A stretch of 64,000 nucleotides of DNA, taken from assembly GCF_001194135.2 (NCBI RefSeq), contig NC_068995.1, forward strand, positions 56,608,328 to 56,672,327. Direction: 5' to 3'. Position numbers and translations under genes: made by a program. Positions within the stretch are counted from its first letter, which is position 1, and each line of letters starts with the position of its first letter. The DNA is from Octopus bimaculoides. Lineage: Eukaryota. The notes beneath the pieces were generated by a model. That model saw only the letters and a list, made by a program, of their open reading frames with translations. It was not told the DNA's origin and ran no database searches. Positions 3,291-55,308 of this stretch are shown here, piece after piece.

Positions 3291-5314
3291 CACCATCATT
3301 TTAATATCCATGCATCCATGTGTGTCAGTGTTGAACAAAATATATTGATGCAGATTTTCTACAGCTGGATGCTCTTCCTGTTGCCAATCCTTGTTCCTAA
3401 GCAAGCTAATATTTCCCCATGGGCAGACAAGTTTTTCATTGGAGACTGGAAACGATCAATGTTACATGTATGATTATAATTCTCATTTGCAACCATCATG
3501 CAATGTCTAGGTAAGCACACACACACACACATCTGTCAAACCCACTCGTATGTGTGTATATGTATGCATGTATGTATGCATTAACCAAAATGATTGCAAA
3601 TTGATAATCATTGTTTTTATTATCTAATTAAATTTTACATGCATTATTTATGTGCACACACACATAAAACAATATGTATATATAGCTTTTATTATTTTAT
3701 TTTAAAGGTTAATATGGATTTGAACACAACACTTCTTCAAAGTATTCAAATGTATTATCTTAATTATAACAGTAATGAATGAGAAAATTATCGTTTTCTT
3801 AATAATCTTTTTCAGTTTAAGCACCATAATGCAACCGATTAAACATTCTGAAGATATGAACAAAAGAAAATCAACTCCATAAAATTCATTCACTCAAACG
3901 GATGCCCTTCACTTGTAAAATAACATCATTTCTGCTGTTAAAAAGAGAAGAAAAAATTAGAAAAGCTACAAAGTGATAATCCATTAGAACATAAAAACAC
4001 CTCATCGATTTCATTTGAAAATACTAAGATTTCATATGAAAGTATTGGCAAGACTTTTGCATAATCTAAAGCTGGTTAAGCAAAAACCACAAACAACAGA
4101 TGCTTTATAAAGCAATATAATTCAAGAAATAAAATTTACTGAAGCTGAAGTTTACCATTCTGTAAAATAATTTAGAAAGCCATATAGAAAATATCATATA
4201 AGCAGGTTTGATTGAACACATGCTTTAAATATTATAAAACACTCCATAAAATTTTTATTTAATTTTCATTTTTTACTGGTTCCAGTCATTAAACTGTAGC
4301 CATGCTGGGGCATGTTGAAGGGTTTTAGTTGAACAAAACAATCCAAGATTTTTTTACTTTCTTTCTTTCATTTATTTATTTTTTTGTTTTTTGTTTTTTA
4401 GTCTGTTACTTATTCTATCAGTTTGTATTGCCAAAATGGTTTCTGAGAAAATATACATCACCCTCCATTACAATATTGGATTGGAAACACAAAACATTTT
4501 TGCCCTGATTCTTGCTTGGAATAAATAATATAATAACTACGACCACAATATTGCTTCATTTCAGAAGGCAAAGTTGGAATTATCTGAAAACACTGATGTA
4601 GCTATGTCCTCTGGTGGTCTGAATGTAAACATAAGGGATTAAAGGAAATATGAAAAGACCCTTAATATAGGTGCAGGTATGGCAGTGTGATTTAAAAGGT
4701 CACTTTACAACAATGTATACAAGTTCGCTAAGACTGATGAGCAATCAATCTTTTTTCCCTCCAGGGACAGAGACAATAGCAAGCTGAGAAGTTTTCCTCA
4801 ACCAGATATCTATCAAACTATTCATCAATACAACTGTTTATTTATTTCAAGCCTACTAACCTAACTACTTAGAATTAATGTGATTACATCAATCCTCACA
4901 GTAAAGACATTACAGACCTGCTGTATAGCAGCTCTATCAAACCCATTGTAGCACGAAACGGTTAAGATGATGCTGCTGCTGCAGCTGGTGATGAATGTAA
5001 ACACACTATTCTTATTTTCTCTTCCACTATCATATATATATACATATATAAATTATGATTTTGTGAAAACCAAACCAAATCCCTAGCATTAATTCAATGA
5101 TATCAATGTATATTATTATTACAAAAGCTTATTTGTCGAGTTGAGAGTTAAAAACCTGTAAGAGCAACATTGTCTGGCTTAGATTTTCACCTTCATAAGT
5201 GATTTGCCTCAATAGGATATAATGTAAGTTTATTATTTCATTATATAATAAAGAAAGCAATGGACACATCCACCTTGACACTGCCTGAACCATTTATACA
5301 TATATACATACATA

Positions 5315-11215: not shown

Positions 11216-12412
11216 AAAAAGTTTTTATTAAAACAAATAATATTCAGTAAACAATTGTAAAGAGTTGTGCATTGGGGGCGGAGGGAGGAAAAATGTGTTT
11301 GTGTGTGTGAATATGTATTCTATAAAGACACGGCAACAGTAGGAAAATGATCAACTTGCTTAAATCCATCAACAAGTAAACATAGTTTAAATTCAAAATG
11401 CTAGAAGTGTCAAACATTTCATAATTTCACATTGACATCATTCTTCGACTGAGTCTATAATTTCTCTGTAATACAAATCTATTATTGTCTGCTTTATGAA
11501 TGTATCTGAATATGTATGAATGAAAATTAGGAAGGAAAAGAAAGAAGCAAACAAACAAAACAAAGCAAATGAAAGCAATTATGAAAGCAGTTGTGTTGAT
11601 CTTCTTGATTGCTAGCTATTATGGAAGCACAAGTAAGTCTCTGATGATCTTTCAAAACCCTGAAAGACTTCAAATGACTTGAGATCAATCATGATTGATG
11701 TTTCATTCATAGCAATTTCTCGTATACAACTGAGAAGAAAAAACAGAAACCCAAGTGTATCCCAAAGACAAGGCATCTTCTTAAGAGCCAGAAAAACTTC
11801 ATTCTTGATTTTTCTGACCTCAAACAATTATCAAGTATAATTTGAAGAACTGTTTACATATCTTGGTTAGTGCCAATGCTATGAGCCTTGGACCACAACT
11901 ACCAAGAAGAAAAACATTTTTTAAAAAATAAACACAACCTAGTTCATCAATAATTTATTACCCTGAGTCAACTAGAAAGTTTCCATATAGAGATTCAGAT
12001 AGAAATAGCAGTAACGTATCACTCAAATCACACCCTACTGTCTTAGATAAAGAAAGGACACAAAGAACAAAGTGCTCAATGGATTGTAGCCATGCTGGTT
12101 CGATTTAATCCTTGGGTGGCATACTTAATCACTGAGTTGCAGACTCAAAAACATCTTAGTTTAAATAAAGGAAATATACATATTGTAGCTGTAGACATAC
12201 TCGTATAATGATGTGATGGTCATGTTTGGAATGTCCTGTTTGATTAAAGTTGATCGGACTAAATTGACCCCAGGACTTATTCTTTGTGGGCCTAGTACTT
12301 ATTGTATTGGTCTCTTTTGCTGAACTGCTAAGTTACAGGGATGTAAACACACCAACATCAGTTGTCAAGCAATAGTAGGAGGAGGGAGGCAAACACAGAC
12401 ACACACATAAAT

Positions 12413-12871
12413 ATCATCATCATCATCATCATCATCATCGTTTAACGTCCGCTTTCCATGCTAGCATGGGTTGGACGATTTGACTGAGGACTGGTGAAAC
12501 CGGATGGCAACACCAGGCTCCAGTCTGATTTGGCAGAGTTTCTACAGCTGGATGCCCTTCCTAACGCCAACCACTCAGAGAGTGTAGTGGGTGCTTTTAC
12601 GTGTCACCCGCACGAAAACGNNNNNNNNNNNNNNNNNNNNNNNNNNNNNNNNNNNNNNNNNNNNNNNNNNNNNNNNNNNNNNNNNNNNNNNNNNNNNNNN
12701 NNNNNNNNNNNNNNNNNNNNNNNNNNNNNCTTTTAGTTTCCGTCTACCAAATCCACTCACAAGGCTTTGGTTGGCCTGAGGCTATAGCAGAAGACACTTG
12801 CCCAAGGTGCCATGCAGTGGGACTGAACCTGGAACCATGTGGTTACGAAGCAAGCTTCTTACCACACAGCC
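12413..12871 (-). mobile_element. Young tRNA-derived SINE with (GAT)n tail (family B), interrupted by an assembly gap
   Basis: Minus-strand head GGCTGTGTGGTAAGAAGCTTGCTTCGTAACCACATGGTTCCAGGTTCAGTCCC (A and B boxes). The 3' part contains GTTAGGAAGGGCATCCAGCTGTAGAAA and ends GGACGTTAAAC(GAT)n. CpGs are retained. N gap at 12621-12729. Confidence 0.85.
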
Positions 12872-12883
12872 ATTTCTGTACCT

Positions 12884-43108: not shown

Positions 43109-45914
43109 AATATATAAGGTATTCTCTCTTATATTATCTGTTTTGGGTTGCATTACTTCCATGCCATCTATTTATCATACATTTATTTCTCTGCACCATT
43201 TCACACGTATGAAATATATTAAAGACACAATATATGCTGCAGCACTAGGATGTTAATTTACTAACAGAAAAGTGGTATTTCACTGTGCCTATAGTCCAAG
43301 AGTCACATTTGACGAACCACATGCATGTTTTGTAAGTTTTTTCTGGATGTCTCTTCGTTTGCCATTTTCAGATCAACCAGTAGCAAAAGAACTCTATAAA
43401 TGTTGCCTTAACACAACATAGCAAGTGAGTCTGTGAGGAGTTGATGGTTTTGAGAATTAACTGAAGCTTCCAGATAATATTTCCTTGGAAAATATTGTCG
43501 CAAAAAGGTTAAGTAGGAGCTTTACAATTCTTTTAACATGGTATTATTATGTCTTTAAGTGCTTTCAAGAGGAAATATTGAAGCAAAGAGTGGGAAACAT
43601 TTGAGAGATAGTAAGTGAACAGATTATGAAATGAGAAAACAGAAAAATGATTTTAAAATTAGAAGAAAGAAAATGAAGTCAGAGAGATGGAATGGAGAAG
43701 TGGAAGAGAGACAAGATTGCAATAAAAGAGTGGAATTGAGATAAATTAATGAACTAAAGAGGGATATTAGGAAGAAGAAAGAAAATGTAACAGAGGAAGA
43801 AAATGAGAAAAATAAGAGAAGGAAAGGATTGAAAACAAAATGAAGGAACTGCTCGTGTAGTTGGGGGGTTCAGTTCCACTGCATGGTACCTTGGGCAAGT
43901 GACTTCTACCAAATCCCCAGGCTGATTATAGTTTTGAGTAGATCTGAGGGATGGAAACTGAAAGAAGCTCATTGTGTGTGTGTGTGAGTCTATCCTAGTG
44001 TTGACATCATGTGACAGTTATAAGTGAATGTTATTCATTTCCTGTATTTTGCAAAAACATTTTCTGGCCTTAGGGAAATATTACTTTGTTTAAAAAGCAG
44101 GTAATGGTTGAAGTTGGAATTAGTTTATTACTAAGGTTTAATTGGAGCTAAGCAACGCATAATTGATAAAAAAGCCAAAAAAAAAAAAACCCCATTAATC
44201 ACGTGATTGATTAGGTGAGTTAACGGAGATGATAAAGAAAAAGGTTAGATAATCTGGAGCATTTTCATTCTTTTGACTCACAGTTCTGCATTCACATTCT
44301 TCTCAAGTCTGTAAAATACCAGTAATATATTACACTTAATTCTGTACACCGTAGATCTTACTTAAAAAAGGATTGTAAAAAAGCCAAAAAAAAACAATCA
44401 TTAAAAAAAATTTATGTCTCATGTTTTGTTTCTCATTTTCATCTAATAAAAAGAAAGTCTTCATGTGATAACTTATACTTTTCAAGACCACAGTTATACA
44501 TTAGCACCAGGCATATACCATTTTTGTTTGTATATAAATGATGCACTTTTGTTTTTAAAAAATATCTCAAAAATTCGTCCAGGGTCCTATATATAGAGTT
44601 GAACATCCTATAGTCTTTAATGCACTAAAACACTAAAACCTCTTTTCTCCTGAAAATGCTCTGCTGAAATTGGGGTGGATCTGATATGCCCATGCAACTT
44701 TTATGCCATCAAATACAGTAAGTGTTATTACATAGTTCAAACATATTTAACTGAGGTCAATTCAACCAACTAACAGATACTCAAAGACACCAGCTATATA
44801 GATTTAGTCATTTCATTCTTTTGTTTTAATGTCTCAGATTTAGTTGAGATATTTTATTTTCGAGGAGACTTTTTTTCAGATTTTCAAAAAGAGAAAAAAA
44901 TGAAAGAAAAGCCATTAAGCTTTTTTATATTTAATTTAAACATCAAAAAAAAAAGTCAATAAATAAAGTTTAACATAGCTTTTGACTCATCACTATCCTG
45001 CTAGCAACATATTTTAACCAGCTGTTACAACCAACCATATTACCTAACGCTTTAAGAAGTAGATTAAGAACATTGCAATATAATTTTGTACTCAACATTT
45101 GCAAATATCACTAACACTAAAACACAAAAATCACATAAAAATCAAAAGCAAAAAGTAAAAAAAAAAAAAACCCACCCAGAAATATTCGATAACTTACTTT
45201 TAATCTAAACAAATTTTGGCAGTGAAATATAGTTTTAGAAGAGGACATTCTCAAAGACATATGTTGATCATTAAGCAGGAACAAAAAACTCAGACAATTT
45301 TTTGTATGTGTTTCCATGACAACAGACAAAGTCTACATGTGTTTCAAGATAGCAAACAAGATTTCTAAAATCTGTCTTTCTCTGTGAATGCATGTGTGTG
45401 TGTATGTTTGTGTATGCATATATATATACACATGCCACACACATACACACAAATGTGTGTATATATATATAATTTTTTTTTTTCTTGCACATACATACAA
45501 ATATGCATCTATCCATTCATGTGTGTCTTTACATCTGTCTATTTACATCTATTTATCTACATATGTACATGCACAGATATACATTATATGCTGATACACA
45601 CACACACACACACAGCGACTGTATATTTTATTTTGTTTATATATTGGATTATGTGGTCCAAACAGAACAAAACTACTAATGGTTATTTGATGTATTTGCA
45701 AAACTCACAGGCCGCACAGATGAGAACATATTAGATAATTTTTAAGTCACATCTGAGAAAGAGAGCAAATAAAGCAAAAAGAAAAAGTTAAAGAGAGAAG
45801 GAATAAAGAAAAAAAAACAAGGAAGAGACATATAGAATGGTATAATAGGGAAAGAAAAAGTTTTATGTAAATATTATGGGAAAAAAAAAATTCTTCAGTA
45901 ACCTAAAATATTAA

Positions 45915-47770: not shown

Positions 47771-48109
47771 ATAAAACTGAACTAAGAAAAAAATATAAAA
47801 CTTAAATGTTATTCAATAATACTTCAAAAAGCAAAATATATAGGTTAATGTTAAGAGAGAAACAATGAAACTGATATAAATTTGAAATCAAAGATTAGAC
47901 ACTACTAAAATATAAAATAAGGATTTCACATTGCAAAAATGTTTGAAGTAACACGAAATCTTTTTAATCTTTTATCATTTTCTGATATTTTATCAATATG
48001 GGTCTTCTTAGCTGCTGGCTCTTAAGAGTCTCACTTTATAACCATTGTTTAGAAACAATGATTTTCCACTTGACAACAAAACATCTGAAAACCTTTCATC
48101 CCTCCCAAG

Positions 48110-48400
48110 GGGTCCCAGAGCTTTTTGCTTGTTAACTGCATGTAACTCTGGCTCATGCTCATAATGTTCATAACGCACGTTGATCCTCAATAGATGATAC
48201 ACAGCCATTTCCTAAAGAGTCACTAAAGCCAATACATTTTACTACTAATATCCAATGCCATGCTTAGTGATTTTAATCAGACTAACACCATTCTCCATTA
48301 CACGATGTCCATAGTAGCTGCATTATTCCGTGAGGCAGTGGTGTGCCGATTTCACTAATATTTTTATGCTTACGACTCCACATACCTTGTAACAATGATA
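48110..48400 (-). mobile_element. Older, highly decayed RLE-type non-LTR retrotransposon fragment
   Basis: Minus-strand motifs in the expected order: KY**NRHTTA (about 48334-48363), HYEHEPE (48146-48166), then LWD after a frameshift (48112-48120). They resemble the RHN..WYEHEP..ILWD motifs of the 39 kb element; spacing is longer than in that copy. Confidence 0.35.
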
Positions 48401-49304
48401 CACCCTGATGGGGATGGCTGCATCGAAAGATTAAAAAGACAGACATTAGGATAGAAACTTCTATCTTTTTTCTTTTTTTTATGTTTTCATCACATTTCCC
48501 AAGAGTTACTCGACTGACCAACTAAGTGTAATGACTCAAACTTCCAATGGCATTCTAGATTTAATATTACTGAAGATGCACCATCATCATAATTGTCATC
48601 ATTACAATCTTAACATACATTTTCCCATGCAGGTAAGAAATGGCCTTGTGTTAGCAGAATAGCATGTTCCTGTAAGTACTTAGCTTCTCATTTCTTCTTA
48701 GAACCAAATGTTGCTCATTTAACGAGACTTGGCATAATCGTTTGTTGCTATGCACAAGTTAATATAATAAACCCAAAGTCTTTTACTTCAATATCTATTT
48801 TACCAGTCTGGCATGAATAAGAAAAAGTTCTGAGATAAGTTGAGAAAGTAAACAAACAAGAGTTGAAAACACCAATGTAAAGTGTCTGAAAGAAATCTCT
48901 AGGCTGGTAATGATATCATCACCATCATTTGAACATTCACTTCTCTATGCTTGCATTGCTCGGTGGTGGGGGCGGGGGTTGCACTGAAGCAGATTTTTAA
49001 GGTTGGATGCCCTTCCTGTCACCAACACTTACCTGTTTCCAAGCAAGATAATATTTTCCCATGAGCTGCTGCTGCTGCTTGTATAACAGTGTCACTCATT
49101 TACGACTATCATACAGTGTGAAGACAAGAACACATGAACATACACACAGTCAGTCACAGCCATATAGACAAGGGCTTGTACATTTACCTGAAATATTGAA
49201 GGTAAAAGCAAAATGCATTGTCAAGTATTTTTTATTATAACCTGCACTATTTTAACTTTGAAAACAAATTTTAAAAACACTTTTATATATATATCAGACA
49301 ATGC

Positions 49305-49745
49305 CCCATGCAAACCATACTACTTTGTGGTGAGGTGGCTTGAATGCCTCAATGACCCTGAGTGAGAGCCATGTCAGAGGAGTGCAAGCTCATGGTAGGA
49401 TTTCTCATTCTGGATAGGTCAAAAGATTGAGGTCAAAATAATATGGACCACCACTTCCCGGAGGTAAAAATGGGTTTGCATAGGGCCAACATTCATACCT
49501 AGTAAAAAAGCAGATTTACAGAAACATTGATGAAAAATCAAGACCAATATGTCCTGGGAAAGGAAGGCCTTCTCTCAGAGAAATATGTAATACGGTGCAA
49601 CAAAATCTGAAAGGAAGCTGCAAGACTGAAAAAGCAGGGATCCAAGAGAAGCAGAAAAGACAGCCCAGAATCAAAAACAGTGGAGGAAAGTTGTGAATTG
49701 TTTGTGGTCCCTTAAGGAGCATAGGGTTTAAGTAAGTAGGTAATT
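49305..49745 (+). mobile_element. Internally deleted RTE-type element, copy 2, with (TAAG)-like tail
   Basis: Shares TAAAAATGGRTTTGYRTAGGGCCAACATTC (49465 vs 23329) and CAAAATCTGAAAGGAA (49601 vs 23471) with copy 1. The 3' part translates REAEKTAQNQKQWRKVVNCLWSLKEHRV*, like the RTE terminal AQxRxxWR motif, followed by TAAGTAAGTAGGTAA. Confidence 0.7.
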
Positions 49746-50879
49746 ATCATATTGCCATGAATGGTGCTAAGGTTGTAGAATAGTTTCAGGGAGGTGCTCC
49801 ATTCCAAGGCTTATATTAATTGGTCTTGTAAAGATTGAAACAATAGCTGTCTCCAAATAAAGAGCAGAAAAATAATAAATTAATATTTAGAATATAAAAG
49901 ATAGATTTTATAGAAGTCTTCAGAAATAAGCTTACAAAACATATTAGATGCATACATATTTAAAACTTTTATAAACAGTTATTTAACTCCATTTATATAT
50001 TCTTTATGTGTCTTAATTTTATAAAACTCATTCTTATAATTGTAAAGGCTATTTTTTTTGTATTTTTATAAATTTTAAATTTGTAAAAATATTTTTAGTT
50101 CAAATTGTAAATTCAAGGAAAATAGTAAGTTACTTATGAAGCAGCCATGAGTTGCTAACGACGTATATTAAATCATTAAGCCCTACAGCAATATGACAAA
50201 ATATTAGAAAAAATGTTATAGAAAGAAATTACTTTCTTCTTTGAGCACTTCAGATAATTGTGGAAATTTTGGAAGAACTCACCAGCATTTTAACGAGAAT
50301 TGAACCTGGGGTTATCATAATTTAGAGTCTTTTTTTTATAAATGTGTGTGTGTATGCATGCACAAACACACACACACACACACGTGCAAACAATGTTTAT
50401 AAACACAGAATTTTGTTTGGATGCATTTTAAATTCACTTTATAATATAATATATACCTCCTATTCTCTCTCACTGGATGTATATACCTATCATATATTTA
50501 TTTATATACACACTCACACAAGCATGTATGTAGATGCATGAGTGTAGATATATACATATATATATATACGCACAGAGATAAAGGCACTTTCACATATGTG
50601 TGTGCACGAGTTTTTGTGTGTGTGATCAAAAATACATATGTATGATAGCAATGGCTTTGTGGTTACAAATCACTTGAATGATAATATTCTGAGTTCAATC
50701 CCATCATATGGCACTTAAGGGAAATGTCTTTTACTCTTTGTCCTATTGTTGGTTCAAATCATTTCTTGTAAGAAAAGTTAGGCAAAAGATGTGTGGCAGT
50801 ACATCAAACGAGTTGTGCCTGTTTAAATTGATATAAACATAAACAGAGGTGCAAGTATACATACACATATGTCTGTTAC

Positions 50880-51107
50880 CTTTCACTTGTTTCAGTCATT
50901 AGACTGTGGCCATGCTGGGGCACCATCCTGAAGAATTTTTGTTGAATGAATCGAGCTCTGCACTTGTTTATTTTTGTTTTTTCTTTTAAACTGATACTTA
51001 TTCTATCAGTCATTTTTACTGAACTTCTAAGTTATAGGACATAAACAGACCAACAACAGTTGTCAAGTGGCGGTGGGGGACATAGACACAAAAACACACA
51101 CATGCGC

Positions 51108-51206
<99 letters not shown>

Positions 51207-51343
51207 TATATATATATATATATATGACGGGCTTTTTCCAGTTTCCATCTATCAAATCCACACAGAAGCCTTTGGTCTGCTTGAAGCTATAGTAGAAAAC
51301 ACTTGCCTAAGGTGCCATGCAATGGGACTGAACCCAGAACCAT
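50880..51343 (-). mobile_element. tRNA-derived SINE (family A), 5'-truncated, with internal compound microsatellite; fused to the rDNA fragment
   Basis: Minus strand starts ATGGTTCTGGGTTCAGTCCCATTGCATGGCACCTTAGGCAAGTGTTTTCTACTATAGC (B-box retained; first ~30 nt of the head seen at 12841-12871 missing). It continues through (TA)(CT)(TA)(GT) repeats to the tail CCAGCATGGCCACAGTCTAATGACTGAAACAAGTGAAA shared with 63870-63920. Confidence 0.9.
51107..51226. repeat. Compound microsatellite (CA)n(TA)n(GA)n(TA)n inside a SINE
   Basis: Directly visible; bounded on both sides by family A SINE sequence. Confidence 0.95.
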
Positions 51344-51460
51344 TCGGCGTTGGGCTTCTCCCGGTTCACTCGCCGTTACTTAGGGAATCCCGGTTAGTTT
51401 CTTTTCCTCCGCTTAGTGATATGCTTAAGTTCGGCAGGTAGTCTCGTCCAAGTCGAGGGC
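51342..51460 (-). rRNA. 28S rRNA: 28S (LSU) rRNA 5'-end fragment, ~119 nt, dispersed non-functional copy
   Basis: Minus strand reads GCCCTCGACTTGGACGAGACTACCTGCCGAACTTAAGCATATCACTAAGCGGAGGAAAAGAAACTAACCGGGATTCCCTAAGTAACGGCGAGTGAACCGGGAGAAGCCCAACGCCGAAT. This matches the conserved eukaryotic LSU 5' end (ACCCGCTGAAYTTAAGCATAT..TAAGCGGAGGAAAAGAAACTAAC..GATTCC..AGTAACGGCGAGTGAA). It stops abruptly after GCCGAAT. Confidence 0.95.
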
Positions 51461-51840
51461 AGGAGCGTGCATGGAGATGTCGCTGCTTGCAGCAGCAGCC
51501 GCGTTCGATGTGTCATCATTTTCGGCCGGCATGGATGCTCGCAACGAGATCTACAGGCTGAACGCCGACCGACGGCGGCCGCGGCCATGGAGGCGACAGG
51601 AACAAGTACGTACGAGATGAGTGAGCATCCGAACGGCAGAGCGGACAGACCGGGTGTCTGTCCGTTCCGTCCGTTCGTCGTCCGGGCAGTTGATTCGTTT
51701 CCTGCTGCTGCATATTTTATGCATATATACATACACATACACATATATAGCAAGTGAAAGACAGACGATGGAATATACGAGAATTTATTATTAATCACGA
51801 CAATTGTTTCGACACATCTAGCATCGATTCCATTCGTTTT
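51461..51840 (-). other. ITS2-like spacer immediately upstream of the 28S fragment
   Basis: GC- and CpG-rich sequence contiguous with the 28S 5' end in an otherwise CpG-poor window. It contains a helix-like inverted repeat, CGGACAGAC-cgggt-GTCTGTCCG (51642-51664), extendable by GAACGG/CCGTTC. No 5.8S sequence is visible. The distal boundary is uncertain (51710-51840). Confidence 0.7.
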
Positions 51841-51849
51841 ATTATCCAT

Positions 51850-51903
<54 letters not shown>

Positions 51904-53756
51904 TATATACATACATGTACACACATATTGACAGCCATACACACACACCCTCTCTCTCATACACACACACAATTATCTTTTTGAATAAATATTTTCAAAA
52001 CCTCTTCATAATGCAATTCTGGATGTAGCTTTTTCAGACAAAGAACCATTTTTGGCAAAGTTATGTGGTTTTGCTTTTTATTTATTAATTCATTTATTTA
52101 TTGAAAAAACAAAAAACACTTTCTCCAGTGATTGCTGTTGTTAATATTACAGTTGCTAATTCCATTTTTAACTATTTTAGTTCTTAAAATATCCAGTTGT
52201 ATTTTATCAATACTTTTGCAATCTGAATACTTGAATCTTTCCGCAACTGCATATTCATGACGTTGTTTGAAGCAAGAGAGCAAATGGTGCTACAGAGCTG
52301 ACAAAAAGGCCTCTAAACCAACAGGAAATATTGAGAATGATGTGAAGACTTTCAGGAAGCAGACAACGTGATCAACAACAATTTTTTTAAATGGTTGAAG
52401 ATAATATTTCTGGACTCTTTTAAAAAAAGAAATGCACCACTACTCAAGAGACATGCTGCGGTTTTTTGGATAAAATGTTACTAAATAAATTTTAAAAAAG
52501 TAACAGACACACATGTATATGTGTAAATATGTACACAGGCAATCCTTGAGATTCATCTCTTCAACCTTTGTCTCTATTTCTGCGTATGTAAAGTGAAATA
52601 GCAGTTTTGTCATGTAGATATGATATGAGGTGCTTTGCTCAAGAACAAAGTGCATCATATAATCCTGGAATTGAAACCACAATTTTGTGATCACGTGTGC
52701 AACAGCCTAAGCATACCTTCTGACATGCATTATAAAAAATTTGAAGTAGAAATACTTAATAAACTTAAAGTAACCCAAGACAAATATTACCAGCACAAAA
52801 CTAACTCAGTAGTTGGCAATTTTCTTCCTGGCATTCGGAGGATTTCTGTGTATTATTTCACTATGGAATTCTGAAATTTAGCCAATTTTTTTTTTCTCTA
52901 ATACAAGCTGAATCTAGTTTGATAACAGCTAAATAACTCAAAAACATTTCAAAAGACACTACACTATTCATGTAGACTGTTTGTCTGCATAATATGTTCA
53001 TACAAGCAAAAATGGCCAATACAAACAATTTATTCCTTTTCATTTTTAAATGGGAAATGCACCAGCAGATGATTCTTGTAATATAGAAATTGCATGATTT
53101 TTTTTTCTTATTATTGCTATAATCATTAATTTAATTTCTATTGTATTACAATGAAAAGGAAATAATTTTCATCTTATTAAAACTGTTAAGGTAAAGTGTG
53201 ATTAAGATATAGTTTTAAGAGAGAACAGGCAGTGAATATTTCATATTCATTTTTAATTTCTTATCCCTAAAACTTTTCATTATTTTGATGAAGGATGGAA
53301 CAATATTTTTTGTCTTTTCCTTCACCCACTCCTTCACTCTCCCCCCCCCCACTCTTAGTCTGGATGAGATTGAGATATTTACATATTTATGGTTGGAGCA
53401 GTAATATTATAATTAAATATTCTTCTTTGTCCAAACAACATATTGCGAATCACAGTGAAGCTCATCACACAAAGGCAAATTAAATACACCGAAATACACA
53501 GAAAATTCTCTGGATTTAGGTGAACGTTTTGCACAATAGCACTGAAAACTCTCAACAGAGTTTCTCAATACAACCTAAGGAAACAACAGAGTTATATTAA
53601 AAACAAACAAACAAAAGAGAAACGAATCTTCAAATTTTAAGTTATCTGCTACCATTCATAACATTTTAAGGGTCATGTCTTTTCTTTGATAGGGATTTTG
53701 AAAGATAAATAAACAACTGTTTAAATAATGGCTAATTGTTATCTTGAAAAATGGTT

Positions 53757-54240
53757 CATCGTCATCATCATCATCATCATCATTTACCAGTCTGAAAGGA
53801 TCGACAGGTTCTGATGAGCCACAGACTGATGCTGAACTCCAGTGTCAGCTTTGGCCTGGTTTCTATAGCAGGATGCTCTTTTCTAACACCAACCACTTTA
53901 CAGAGTACCAGGTGCTTGTTGTCATTCCACCTGCACTCGTGATGTTGCCAAGTAATTTGCAAGATGGGGAAATAATAACAGGGAAAAAGGAAAAAAAAAA
54001 TCTGCCATTAAGTGAGGGGAGTATTCGAGGATGAGGGCAGGAGGTGGCTTATTGTAAAGAGTTGGAAGTTGAAGTATGACAGAAGGAACAGACATAAGAG
54101 TCTTGTTGTAGAGTGAATACAGGATTATCACACATCATGTAAAGAGGAGTGGGAGTAAGAGTTTGTGAGCAAACTCCAAAGGCACAGAAAAGTGAGTATA
54201 AGAAAGGCGGTGAAGATGAGCAGAGAGGTGAGCATATGTG
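53757..54240 (-). mobile_element. Family B repeat, long decayed copy
   Basis: (CAT)n tail, GGATGCTCTTTTCTAACACCAACCACTTTACAGAGT, and a purine-rich extension similar to 27100-27240. Confidence 0.7.
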
Positions 54241-55308
54241 AGGTTTAGTTATTAAATTTAATCTAAGAATCAAGAAAGAAAAAAAAGGATATAAGCCTTA
54301 CTTATATAAGGAATTGCAAATAAATGTGTAGCATGATTTATTTGTTTCTTTTTCAGCTAACAAATGTTTTGTGTCGTTTAGTTTATAGCATCCTATAACG
54401 AATACGAGAGGACATATAATGCATTTGTGTCACCACAAACTGAAAGAGCTCCTAAAACTGGTGCTTATTTCCAGATTTGAAACATGAAACAGAGGAATGA
54501 AGAATTTCACTAATTCCTAGAAGATCTAATATGTATTTCTTTAGCCATGTCAACCGAAGCATGACTCCTGTCCGAATACATAGACTATAGAAGTGTGAAA
54601 TTATGATTCAAGAGCTAGTAATCAGACAACTTATTCACTTAGCTATTTTGTCTCTACATAATGTAGCTAATTAAAGATGAAGAAAACAAAAGTTTGTAAT
54701 TAACTGAACTGAGGGTTTTAAGCTCTTTGAAAGTTCTGCTGCATGTGAAATTTTCAGTCAACAAATTGCTTTGGATTGTTTGATATGGATAAAACTAACA
54801 GACCAAGTAAAGTTGACAAGTCAACTCCATTATTTTAACTGAGGAACGACACACGTGTTTTCTCTTTTATAAGGAAATGTAAAATGTGTTTAAACAGCCC
54901 AGTGAATGTGAAAAATACTTTTGATGGTGAAAGAATGGCCAGTCTTTAGATTTGTTAGTATTTTGCTATCTTATTTTCTGTGATAAGAGAGTGACAGTTC
55001 TCAAGAATATTATGTTCTATTTTGAAATTTGTTAACTCAAAGAATAAATTTTATATTTAGTTGATTTAACTCTTTAATTCTCATGAAATATATTATCCTT
55101 ATATTTTAAATGGGTTTATAAAACAATGCAAACTTTGGAAGGATTTAGTAAGATAATTAACATCTGTTTTATAATTAAGCTAATAATATTTGTAACTATG
55201 AGATTTCAATGGTGTGATTGCTTATTTTTAGAAAATTGCAGGGTGGGTGCAAAAGCTTGAATCTGGCCGCTTTGAATACAACACAGGTAGAGTATTTAGT
55301 TCAAATAT

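What the first reader, a model, noticed from the sequence alone, without database searches (positions are those of the whole stretch)
50880..51840. Pre-rRNA (ITS2 + 28S 5' end) fused in-sense to a 5'-truncated SINE: candidate template-switch chimeric retrocopy
Seen: on the minus strand, CpG-rich ITS2-like DNA runs into the first ~119 nt of 28S (..CCCAACGCCGAAT). It then continues with no filler into a SINE that begins at ATGGTTCTGGGTTCAGTCCC. The SINE lacks only its first ~30 nt, including the A box, and is complete to its 3' tail. The junction shares a 2-nt AT microhomology (51342-51343), and both parts are co-oriented. The missing SINE 5' end does not reappear beyond the rDNA, so this is not a simple insertion into a SINE. 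Known: LINE reverse transcriptases make 5'-cellular RNA / 3'-retroposon chimeras by template switching (U6-L1 type), and 28S-derived SINEs exist. Inference: the RT switched from SINE RNA to an unprocessed rRNA precursor, because the copy crosses the ITS2-28S processing site. That would imply nucleolar or nuclear RNA was captured. If multicopy, it could be an incipient rRNA-headed SINE subfamily. CpGs in the rDNA part are largely intact, suggesting a recent event or an unmethylated locus.
Basis: partly seen in the sequence, partly recalled or inferred. Interest (0 to 1): 0.78.

Follow-up and report, generated by a model that had tools for sequence, protein, structure and literature searches.

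The report
28S rRNA–SINE chimeric retrocopy, not pre-rRNA
A single-copy piece of junk DNA in what looks like an octopus genome joins the first 121 bases of mature 28S ribosomal RNA to a head-less SINE, most likely because a retrotransposon's reverse transcriptase jumped between RNA templates; the supposed ITS2 part is not ITS2, so nothing shows capture of unprocessed rRNA.

Summary
The core observation holds. On the minus strand, 28S rRNA nt 1-121 (51462-51342) runs with no filler into a SINE that lacks its first 33-36 nt and is complete to its tail (51343-~50870). The two parts are co-oriented and share a 2-nt AT overlap.

The key interpretive claim fails. DNA and RNA reads of the species' real rDNA leave the window at exactly 51462. 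They continue as an AT-rich sequence that matches the window's CpG-rich block at 6 of 30 positions. That block (51463-51725) is single copy even at 80% identity. Rfam model position 1 projects to 51461, so the copy starts at the mature 28S 5' end and does not cross into ITS2.

The junction is real and single or low copy: one read pair from an independent 2026 sample spans it, against about 1.4 reads expected for one copy. It is not a SINE subfamily.

A perfect 14-nt direct repeat (TATGTGTATGTATA; chance 0.2-0.9%) brackets the block, the 28S piece and the SINE together. This suggests one 856-bp insertion made by two template jumps. The block's source is unidentified.

Such chimeras, including 28S rRNA/LINE-1 and tripartite ones, are documented in mammals and fungi. 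This is a new member of a known kind, of modest interest.

The parts
50856..50869 (-). 3' copy of the 14-nt direct repeat TATGTGTATGTATA (candidate target-site duplication), directly after the SINE tail
   Evidence: Exact match to 51739-51726. Only 3 occurrences in the window on both strands. Control segment pairs reach >=14 nt in about 1% of cases. A position-aware null gives 0.2-0.9%.
50870..51343 (-). High-copy tRNA-type SINE lacking its first 33-36 nt (A-box part of the head). It is complete to its 3' tail and contains an expanded internal (TA)n(TC)n(TA)n(TG)n microsatellite at about 51100-51230.
   Evidence: Depth reaches thousands to tens of thousands in a sample where single-copy DNA has depth about 1. 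Head defined from the full-length copy at 12880-12735(-) and from clipped reads. 3' end placed at about 50870-50885 from the depth drop and the A-rich loose ends of other copies. Exact unique contigs from X1 and X2 cover 50690-50901 and 50902-51024.
51342..51343 (-). 2-nt AT overlap (microhomology) at the 28S/SINE junction
   Evidence: SINE reads clip at 51343 and real 28S contigs clip at 51342. One read pair of run X21 spans 51317-51368 at >=99% identity and runs over both ends.
51342..51462 (-). Copy of nt 1-121 of mature 28S rRNA. It has 4 differences from the species' rDNA, at 51396, 51417, 51436 and 51450; three of them are CpG transitions.
   Evidence: Rfam LSU_rRNA_eukarya 85.5 bits, with model position 1 projecting to 51461. 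rDNA-level depth of 70-400 runs from 51344 to 51465, and clipped reads mark 51462 and 51342 as the ends of homology. CpG context.
51463..51725 (-). Block X: a 263-nt single-copy segment, CpG-rich from 51715 down (GC 0.60, CpG obs/exp 1.31). Origin unknown. It is not ITS2. It lies inside the direct repeats, so it is probably a third captured template.
   Evidence: Depth 0-4 at >=80% identity. Exact single-copy contigs in X1, X2, X13, X4, X6 and X43. No Rfam hit, no protein homologue and no Pfam family. Folds with z=-3.5 and -3.3 on the two strands. Composition.
51726..51739 (-). 5' copy of the 14-nt direct repeat TATGTGTATGTATA
   Evidence: Covered by exact single-copy contigs running from 51690 to 51784/51792 in three individuals.
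51750..51831 (.). Upstream flank: a fragment of another, unidentified high-copy repeat, cut off at 51831. It is part of the target site, not of the chimera.
   Evidence: Depth up to about 600 in the X21 sample. Clipped reads at 51828/51831 continue as ..GGGTGGGACACTCAACAACTGGTTCA in other copies.

Best explanation
This is a dead, single-copy chimeric retrocopy made in one LINE-driven, target-primed reverse transcription event. The proposed sequence of steps is as follows. The reverse transcriptase primed on the 3' tail of a SINE RNA and copied it up to about nt 34 of the tRNA-like head. It then switched, through a 2-nt AT microhomology, onto 28S rRNA at nt 121 and ran off the 5' end of the mature 28S molecule. 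Most probably it then jumped once more onto a third template, the 263-nt block X, before the cDNA was joined to the chromosome. That joining duplicated 14 bp of a TA/TG microsatellite next to an older repeat.

Shown: the part boundaries, the co-orientation, the microhomology, the coincidence with the mature 28S 5' end, single-copy status, presence in several individuals, and the direct repeat. Inferred: that the joins were made by template switching rather than by RNA ligation or DNA repair, that X was an RNA, and which LINE supplied the enzyme.

The element has no evident function. It has lost the A-box region, it is not detectably transcribed across the junction, and it is decaying at CpGs.
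For: 1. 28S identity and extent: Rfam 85.5 bits; read homology 51462-51342.
2. The copy starts at the RNA's 5' end. Rfam model position 1 projects to 51461, and 166 clipped rDNA/pre-rRNA reads leave the window at 51462. Other low-depth 28S-like contigs elsewhere in the genome also lose homology at 51461/51462 with heterogeneous flanks, as expected for retrocopies of an RNA end.
3. A 3' part that is 5'-truncated but complete at its tail, in the same orientation, with no filler and a 2-nt overlap.
4. It is not a sequential insertion into a 28S pseudogene. No 28S sequence follows the SINE tail, there is only one LSU hit in 48-55 kb, and the true continuation CTCGTCGGCC.. is absent from the window.
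5. The junction is real. One read pair in an independent 2026 sample spans it, against about 1.4 reads expected for one copy. Exact unique contigs cover both flanks in runs from 2015, 2022 and 2025.
6. A 14-nt perfect direct repeat lies exactly at the SINE tail and just upstream of X, with chance 0.2-0.9%. No repeat of >=6 nt lies next to the 28S start.
7. 3 of the 4 differences from the rDNA are CpG transitions, so the piece derives from this lineage's own 28S and has decayed in place.
8. Precedent: 28S rRNA/LINE-1 chimeras (n=18, 83% in sense, fragments of 50-482 nt) in PMC13174262, and a tripartite chimera with 14-bp direct repeats in PMC2104539.
Against: 1. No parent for X was found. It is single copy at >=90% over 51466-51555. 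Only about 85-90% identical, indel-bearing paralogs are seen, over 51482-51595 and 51641-51711. A recently captured cellular RNA should still have a closer parent gene.
2. The direct repeat is microsatellite-like sequence in a microsatellite-rich genome.
3. The SINE part is somewhat more diverged from its family majority (11/112) than the 28S part is from the rDNA (4/121). The difference is not significant (p=0.06) and could also reflect an old source copy.
4. Junction support rests on a single read pair. Logan contigs never span the junction, although assemblers prune such short paths between two repeats.
5. A 2-nt overlap arises by chance about 1 time in 16 and is equally compatible with microhomology-mediated DNA end joining.
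6. The mature 28S 5' end was not mapped experimentally. The RNA start pile-up at 51457 leaves up to 5 nt of possible ITS2.
Confidence: 0.62

Rival explanations
1. Bipartite chimera next to native DNA. Only 28S nt 1-121 plus the SINE were inserted, by a single template switch. Block X is a native single-copy CpG island at the target site, and the 14-nt repeat is a coincidence of microsatellite sequence. The insertion has no target-site duplication, for example because of a target deletion or 5' end joining by repair.
For: X is single copy with no close parent. Its CpG obs/exp of 1.31 contrasts with 0-0.26 in the SINE and the flanks, as for a native unmethylated island. One or two RNA reads cover X.
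Against: No direct repeat of >=6 nt lies next to the 28S start. The 14-nt repeat sits exactly at the SINE tail, and its recurrence has a chance of 0.2-0.9%. X has no gene model, protein homologue or Pfam match, and no indexed RNA run holds it.
Confidence: 0.22
2. DNA-level patchwork. An older SINE suffered a double-strand break in its head. Repair by end joining deleted 33-36 nt and captured a stray 28S cDNA or rDNA fragment, with or without X.
For: A 2-nt microhomology is typical of end joining. The SINE part is nominally more decayed than the 28S part (11/112 against 4/121, p=0.06; both consensus CpGs lost against 3 of 13 lost, p=0.095).
Against: A random rDNA fragment would not start at the mature RNA 5' end. 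The parts are co-oriented. The direct repeat brackets the whole composite including the SINE tail, which argues for one integration event. The difference in decay is not significant.
Confidence: 0.1
3. The reverse transcriptase switched from SINE RNA onto unprocessed pre-rRNA, so block X is ITS2, either the current one or one from a divergent, non-homogenised rDNA unit.
For: X is GC- and CpG-rich and strongly self-pairing like a spacer (z=-3.5). It shares one 8-mer (GCAGCGAC) with the last 30 nt of the true ITS2, at a similar distance from 28S. Homology breaking at the 28S start would also be expected if the spacer were simply unalignable.
Against: 166 clipped DNA and RNA reads give one dominant true spacer end that matches X at 6 of 30 positions. 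X is single copy even at 80% identity. The 28S piece differs from the rDNA only by in-place decay, so a spacer copied at the same time should still be recognisable. X folds equally well on both strands. There is no 5.8S upstream.
Confidence: 0.04
4. Assembly chimera. The 28S/SINE junction does not exist in the animal.
For: No Logan contig spans the junction. The window comes from a gapped assembly with 3107 N.
Against: Exact unique contigs reach 51402 from one side and cover the SINE 3' half from the other in several runs.
Confidence: 0.02

Closest known systems
Bipartite and tripartite chimeric retrogenes formed by LINE reverse-transcriptase template switching (U6/L1 type; MINE and the WEIRD-MgSINE-MGL chimera of Magnaporthe; B2-U6-L1 in mouse), PMC2104539
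   Same: A cellular RNA copy sits at the 5' side and a 5'-truncated retroposon copy at the 3' side. They are joined directly in the same orientation and bracketed by a short direct repeat; 14 bp here, and 14 bp in the fungal tripartite case. A WEIRD/5'-truncated Mg-SINE chimera shows that a SINE can be the 3' partner.
   Different: The 5'-side RNA here is not full length. It is only nt 1-121 of 28S, complete at its 5' end and truncated at its 3' end. The host is a mollusc, so the enzyme is not L1 or MGL and is unidentified. The third part, X, has no identified parent RNA.
[quoted passage not shown]
   Same: Fragments of 28S rRNA (50-482 nt) are fused in sense orientation (83%) to the 5' end of a retroposon copy, and are attributed to template switching or RNA ligation during target-primed reverse transcription.
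   Different: In those cases the partner is LINE-1 itself and the fragments cluster around nt 3636-4115 of 28S. Here the partner is a SINE and the fragment is the extreme 5' end, nt 1-121.
SINEs with heads derived from rRNA or snRNA: SINE28 (PMC4994717), 5S-derived SINE3 and SINEU (PMC4494074)
   Same: An rRNA- or snRNA-derived 5' part is joined to a SINE or LINE-type body. Such families are thought to start from chimeras of this kind.
   Different: Those are multicopy, transcribed families. This junction is single or low copy. The 28S 5' end is not known to carry an internal pol III promoter (general knowledge, not tested here), and the SINE's A-box region is lost.
tRNA-derived SINEs of octopus (OK, OR1, OR2; Ohshima and Okada 1994, cited in PMC4824008)
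   Same: The 3' partner is a very abundant SINE with a tRNA-like head and an internal microsatellite, of the type I recall from octopus genomes. The family resemblance is from memory and was not tested against a reference consensus.
   Different: This copy is head-truncated and fused to rRNA. The exact family could not be assigned with these tools, and ARAGORN does not call the head of the full-length copy as a tRNA.

Membership tests
Chimeric retrogene/retrocopy by LINE RT template switching (criteria i-v of PMC2104539) | (i) The 5' part is a copy of a cellular RNA that reaches that RNA's 5' end (full length in the classic U6 cases) | tested here: inconclusive
   The 28S copy begins at the mature 5' end: homology starts at 51462 and Rfam position 1 projects to 51461. 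It covers only nt 1-121, so it is complete at the 5' end but not full length. Fragmentary 28S parts are the norm in PMC13174262.
Chimeric retrogene/retrocopy by LINE RT template switching (criteria i-v of PMC2104539) | (ii) The 3' part is a 5'-truncated retroposon copy that is complete at its 3' end | tested here: met
   The SINE lacks 33-36 nt of its head and runs to its tail at about 50870.
Chimeric retrogene/retrocopy by LINE RT template switching (criteria i-v of PMC2104539) | (iv) The parts are joined directly in the same transcriptional orientation | tested here: met
   Both parts are on the minus strand, with no filler and a 2-nt overlap at 51343-51342.
Chimeric retrogene/retrocopy by LINE RT template switching (criteria i-v of PMC2104539) | [quoted passage not shown] | tested here: met
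   A 14-nt perfect repeat lies at 50869-50856 and 51739-51726, with chance 0.2-0.9%. It brackets X, 28S and SINE together, not 28S and SINE alone. No repeat of >=6 nt adjoins the 28S start.
Chimeric retrogene/retrocopy by LINE RT template switching (criteria i-v of PMC2104539) | Each part derives from an identifiable transcript | tested here: inconclusive
   Met for 28S and for the SINE. Not met for X: no Rfam, Pfam or protein match, no close genomic parent, and only 85-90% identical partial paralogs.
Copy of pre-rRNA spanning ITS2 and 28S | The sequence upstream of 28S matches the species' ITS2 | tested here: not met
   The true upstream sequence from 166 clipped reads matches at 6 of 30 positions. 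The block is single copy at >=80% identity.
Copy of pre-rRNA spanning ITS2 and 28S | 5.8S or further rDNA lies upstream of the spacer | tested here: not met
   There is no other rRNA hit in 48000-55000 at E<=1.
rRNA-headed SINE family (SINE28 / SINE3 type) | Many dispersed copies share the same head-body junction | tested here: not met
   2 reads (one pair) span the junction in about 2x sampled coverage, against about 1.4 expected for a single copy. The motif occurs once in the window.
rRNA-headed SINE family (SINE28 / SINE3 type) | The element is transcribed from an internal promoter | tested here: not met
   The A-box part of the tRNA-like head is deleted. No junction-spanning read was found in the RNA run sampled, and no indexed RNA run holds the locus. 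Promoter activity itself cannot be tested here.
Octopus tRNA-derived SINE (OK/OR families) | High copy number and a tRNA-like head with A and B boxes | tested here: inconclusive
   Copy number is very high. A B-box-like GGTTCAGTCCC is retained. ARAGORN calls no tRNA in the window. No reference consensus was available, so the family name rests on memory.

The most novel reading that the evidence does not exclude
The locus is a true tripartite retrocopy made by two successive template jumps of a molluscan LINE reverse transcriptase: SINE RNA, then mature 28S rRNA at nt 121 and off its 5' end, then an unidentified CpG-rich RNA. It would be one of a recurrent class, because other dispersed 28S-like fragments in this genome also lose homology at the same first nucleotide of 28S. 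That would mean octopus retrotransposition complexes regularly engage ribosomal RNA, perhaps on the ribosome, and would extend double template jumping from fungi and mammals to cephalopods.
Probability: 0.4. Interest if true: 0.45.

Novelty: new member of a known kind. Interest (0 to 1): 0.3.

Why it matters
If the reading is right, this locus is a clean natural record of template switching, probably double switching, by a non-mammalian LINE enzyme that used a SINE as its first template and mature 28S rRNA as its second. It shows that the phenomenon catalogued in primates and in a fungus also operates in what appears to be a cephalopod genome, a lineage where SINE and LINE activity is of current interest.

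It does not support the more exciting claims. It gives no evidence that nucleolar pre-rRNA is accessible to the retrotransposition machinery, and no new rRNA-headed SINE lineage is being born.

It also carries a practical lesson for scans. CpG-rich DNA next to a 28S start is not necessarily ITS2, and read depth separates the two readings quickly.

Tried and rejected
1. Block X as a + strand first coding exon (49-aa ATG ORF at 51471-51620 with a GTACGT donor-like site). Rejected: no homologue or gene model in 5.8 billion proteins, no Pfam family, no indexed RNA run holds it, and the one or two RNA reads run through the putative donor.

2. X as a structured ncRNA. There is no Rfam hit at E<=1. 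The folding z-score is equally low on both strands, so it reflects inverted repeats and is not strand-specific.

3. Sequential insertion of a SINE into a 28S retropseudogene. Rejected: no 28S sequence follows the SINE tail.

4. Junction support from Logan contigs. Uninformative: the k=31 contigs break at the two repeats and none spans the junction. A raw-read design with 27 nt on each side solved this.

All later stretches avoided them.

6. Cross-species empty-site test. Only runs of organism A hold the flank or X at near-identity, so no orthologous site could be examined. No empty allele was seen among the individuals examined.

7. The mir-297, mir-3149, SCARNA7 and similar Rfam hits around the locus are all below gathering score and lie on TA/TG microsatellites. 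They are false positives.

8. A whole-window Rfam run at gathering threshold returned nothing. The 28S fragment was reported only by the permissive (E-value threshold) run.
Full report
WHAT IS IN THE SEQUENCE. Reading the minus strand from 51,739 down to 50,856, the parts occur in this order:
- a 14-nt motif TATGTGTATGTATA (51,739-51,726);
- a 263-nt block, here called X (51,725-51,463), which is CpG-rich from about 51,715 down (GC 0.60, CpG obs/exp 1.31);
- a 28S rRNA 5' fragment (51,462-51,342);
- a SINE (51,343 to about 50,870) that contains a long internal (TA)n(TC)n(TA)n(TG)n microsatellite;
- the same 14-nt motif again (50,869-50,856).

Rfam identifies the 28S piece: LSU_rRNA_eukarya, 85.5 bits, E=1.4e-19, model positions 24-103 at 51,438-51,359. 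Extrapolating, model position 1 falls at 51,461. The window contains one full-length copy of the same SINE, at 12,880-12,735 on the minus strand. Its head reads GGCTGTGTGGTAAGAAGCTTGCTTCGTAACCAC before ATGGTTCC, so the copy at 51,343 lacks 33-36 nt. I recognise the SINE from memory as the abundant tRNA-type SINE of octopus genomes. The organism is coded in the tools, so this identification is a lead, not a result.

READ EVIDENCE FOR THE BOUNDARIES. Runs of one species ('organism A') from several studies between 2015 and 2026 hold the locus. In raw DNA reads where unique sequence has depth about 1, the SINE part has depth in the thousands. The 28S part has depth 70-400. Depth then falls to 0-4 at 51,465/51,466 and stays there through X. 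The same pattern holds when reads are accepted down to 80% identity. SINE reads clip at 51,343 (8,775 reads in one run), continuing as the missing head. Real 28S contigs clip at 51,342, continuing as CTCGTCGGCCGCGCCGG... At the other end, 103 and 35 DNA reads and 28 RNA reads of the real rDNA or pre-rRNA clip at 51,462. They give the true upstream sequence CGCAGCGACGACTTTTTATTTTTTTCTAAG, which matches the window at only 6 of 30 positions. X is therefore not this species' ITS2. The rDNA homology begins within about a nucleotide of the 28S 5' end predicted by Rfam. A small pile-up of RNA molecule starts at 51,457 leaves at most about 5 nt of uncertainty. The SINE's 3' end is at about 50,870-50,885: depth goes from about 28,000 to about 100 to about 1, and other copies continue into A-rich tails.

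IS THE JUNCTION REAL, AND HOW MANY COPIES ARE THERE? Logan contigs never span the junction. This is expected for a 30-nt unique path between two high-copy repeats. I therefore laid raw reads on a 52-nt stretch with only 27 nt on each side at >=98% identity, so that SINE-only and rDNA-only reads could not be placed. One read pair of run X21 (an independent 2026 sample) covers the whole stretch and runs over both ends. None was found in two other DNA runs or in an RNA run. Sampled coverage is about 2x, assuming a genome of about 2.7 Gb. That assumption is consistent with the observed depth of about 1 per run on unique flanks. A single-copy locus should then yield about 1.4 such reads, and a family of hundreds of copies would yield hundreds. 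The junction exists and is single or low copy. Exact single-copy contigs cover 50,690-50,901, 50,902-51,024, 51,402-51,670 and 51,642-51,745 in runs from 2015 and 2025. They also cover 51,690-51,784/792 in three further individuals. The insertion is therefore shared, and no empty allele was seen.

ORIGIN AND AGE OF THE 28S PIECE. It differs from the species' rDNA at four positions. Three of these are CpG>TpG/CpA changes, and 10 of 13 CpGs survive. This is what in-place decay of a copy of this lineage's own 28S looks like. It argues against a foreign or strongly divergent rDNA source, and against the idea that the locus has been protected from methylation. The SINE part differs from its family majority at 11 of 112 positions. 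The contrast with 4 of 121 in the 28S part is not significant (p=0.06; CpG loss p=0.095), and a SINE RNA transcribed from an old copy would give the same pattern.

ONE INSERTION OR SEVERAL? The 14-mer TATGTGTATGTATA begins directly after the SINE tail and recurs just upstream of X. It occurs only three times in the window on both strands. Matched control segment pairs reach 14 nt in about 1% of cases. A position-aware null, including one restricted to microsatellite-like 14-mers, gives 0.2-0.9%. No repeat of 6 nt or more adjoins the 28S start. No 28S sequence follows the SINE tail, which excludes insertion of a SINE into a pre-existing 28S pseudogene. The missing SINE head is nowhere nearby. 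The most economical reading is a single 856-bp integration comprising X, 28S nt 1-121 and the SINE. It landed in a short TA/TG microsatellite beside a fragment of another high-copy repeat (51,750-51,831).

WHAT IS X? I could not identify it. It is single copy. It has no Rfam hit. Its 49-aa + strand ORF has no homologue or gene model, and its ORFs match no Pfam family. No indexed RNA run holds it, and only one or two RNA reads cover it. It folds better than shuffles on both strands alike (z=-3.5 and -3.3), which reflects an imperfect palindrome around 51,640-51,690 rather than strand-specific RNA structure. One run of unknown library type (X13) has contigs at about 85-90% identity, with indels, over 51,482-51,595 at high depth, and others over 51,641-51,711. 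Distant paralogs therefore exist, but no close parent. This is the main weakness of the tripartite model and the main support for the rival in which X is native DNA.

MECHANISM. The anatomy matches the published criteria for chimeric retrocopies made by LINE reverse-transcriptase template switching: a 5' cellular RNA copy, a 5'-truncated retroposon at the 3' side, direct co-oriented joining, and flanking direct repeats (PMC2104539). That paper also documents a cellular-RNA/5'-truncated SINE chimera and a tripartite chimera flanked by 14-bp repeats. A 2026 catalogue reports 18 28S rRNA/LINE-1 chimeras in primates, 83% in sense orientation, with 28S fragments of 50-482 nt (PMC13174262). Here the enzyme would have started on the SINE tail and left the SINE RNA at about nt 34, inside the tRNA-like head. 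It would have landed on 28S at nt 121 through a 2-nt match and run off the 5' end of the mature rRNA. It then probably made an end-to-template jump onto X. RNA ligation before reverse transcription, or microhomology-mediated DNA end joining, cannot be excluded for individual joins. The start at the RNA's 5' terminus and the bracketing repeat favour an RNA-templated single event.

The structural observation was accurate, apart from the label on the upstream block. The suggestion of an incipient rRNA-headed SINE subfamily is not supported either: the junction is single or low copy, the A-box region is lost, and no junction transcript was seen.

VERDICT. This is a real, fixed or high-frequency, single-copy chimeric retrocopy of mature 28S rRNA nt 1-121 fused to a head-truncated SINE. 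It is probably tripartite. It is a new member of a well-described kind, in a lineage (apparently a cephalopod) for which my literature searches turned up no such chimeras. Interest is modest at 0.3. Confidence in the template-switch retrocopy explanation is about 0.6, and in the tripartite version about 0.4-0.5.

Noticed in passing
window 51750-51831: Fragment of an unidentified high-copy repeat (depth about 600 where single copy is about 1). It is cut off at 51831, whereas other copies continue as ..GGGTGGGACACTCAACAACTGGTTCA. It occurs only once in the window.
   Followed up: partly
elsewhere in the genome (seen via reads laid on window 51342-51462): Several low-depth contigs carry diverged 28S 5'-end fragments (5-19 differences per about 100 nt) embedded in 0.4-2.5 kb of unrelated sequence. 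For several of them homology ends at the same 51461/51462 position, with heterogeneous upstream flanks. This suggests recurrent retrocopies that start at the mature 28S 5' end.
   Followed up: partly
window 12296-12880 (-): Full-length copy of the same SINE, interrupted by an assembly gap (N run at about 12631-12729). It is followed by a different SINE-like element at about 12430-12620 that ends in a (GAT)n run, which looks like a nested or adjacent insertion.
   Followed up: no
window 43866-43968 (+): A roughly 75% identical, older relative of the SINE's B-box/core region (GGTTCAGTTCCACTGCATGGTACCTTGGGCAAGTGA..) without the usual downstream body.
   Followed up: no
window 51482-51595 and 51641-51711: In run X13 (library type unknown), contigs about 85-90% identical to these parts of block X reach depth about 190, against about 5-10 for unique sequence. 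In ordinary DNA runs the paralogs look like 1-3 copies. This could mean an enriched library (open chromatin or RNA) covering a paralogous CpG island.
   Followed up: partly
window 50333-50660 and 51850-51920: TA/TG microsatellites give sub-threshold Rfam hits to mir-297, mir-3149, mir-1277, SCARNA7 and others. All are below gathering score and are composition artefacts.
   Followed up: yes
window 51640-51690 (-): An imperfect palindrome of about 48 nt, CGAACGGACGGAACGGACAGAC..GTCTGTCCGCTCTGCCGTTCG, inside block X accounts for much of its folding stability on both strands.
   Followed up: no
whole window: The window contains 3107 N, so it comes from a gapped assembly. It is AT-rich (about 33% GC), with CpG obs/exp of about 0.25 in the flanks of the locus.
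   Followed up: no
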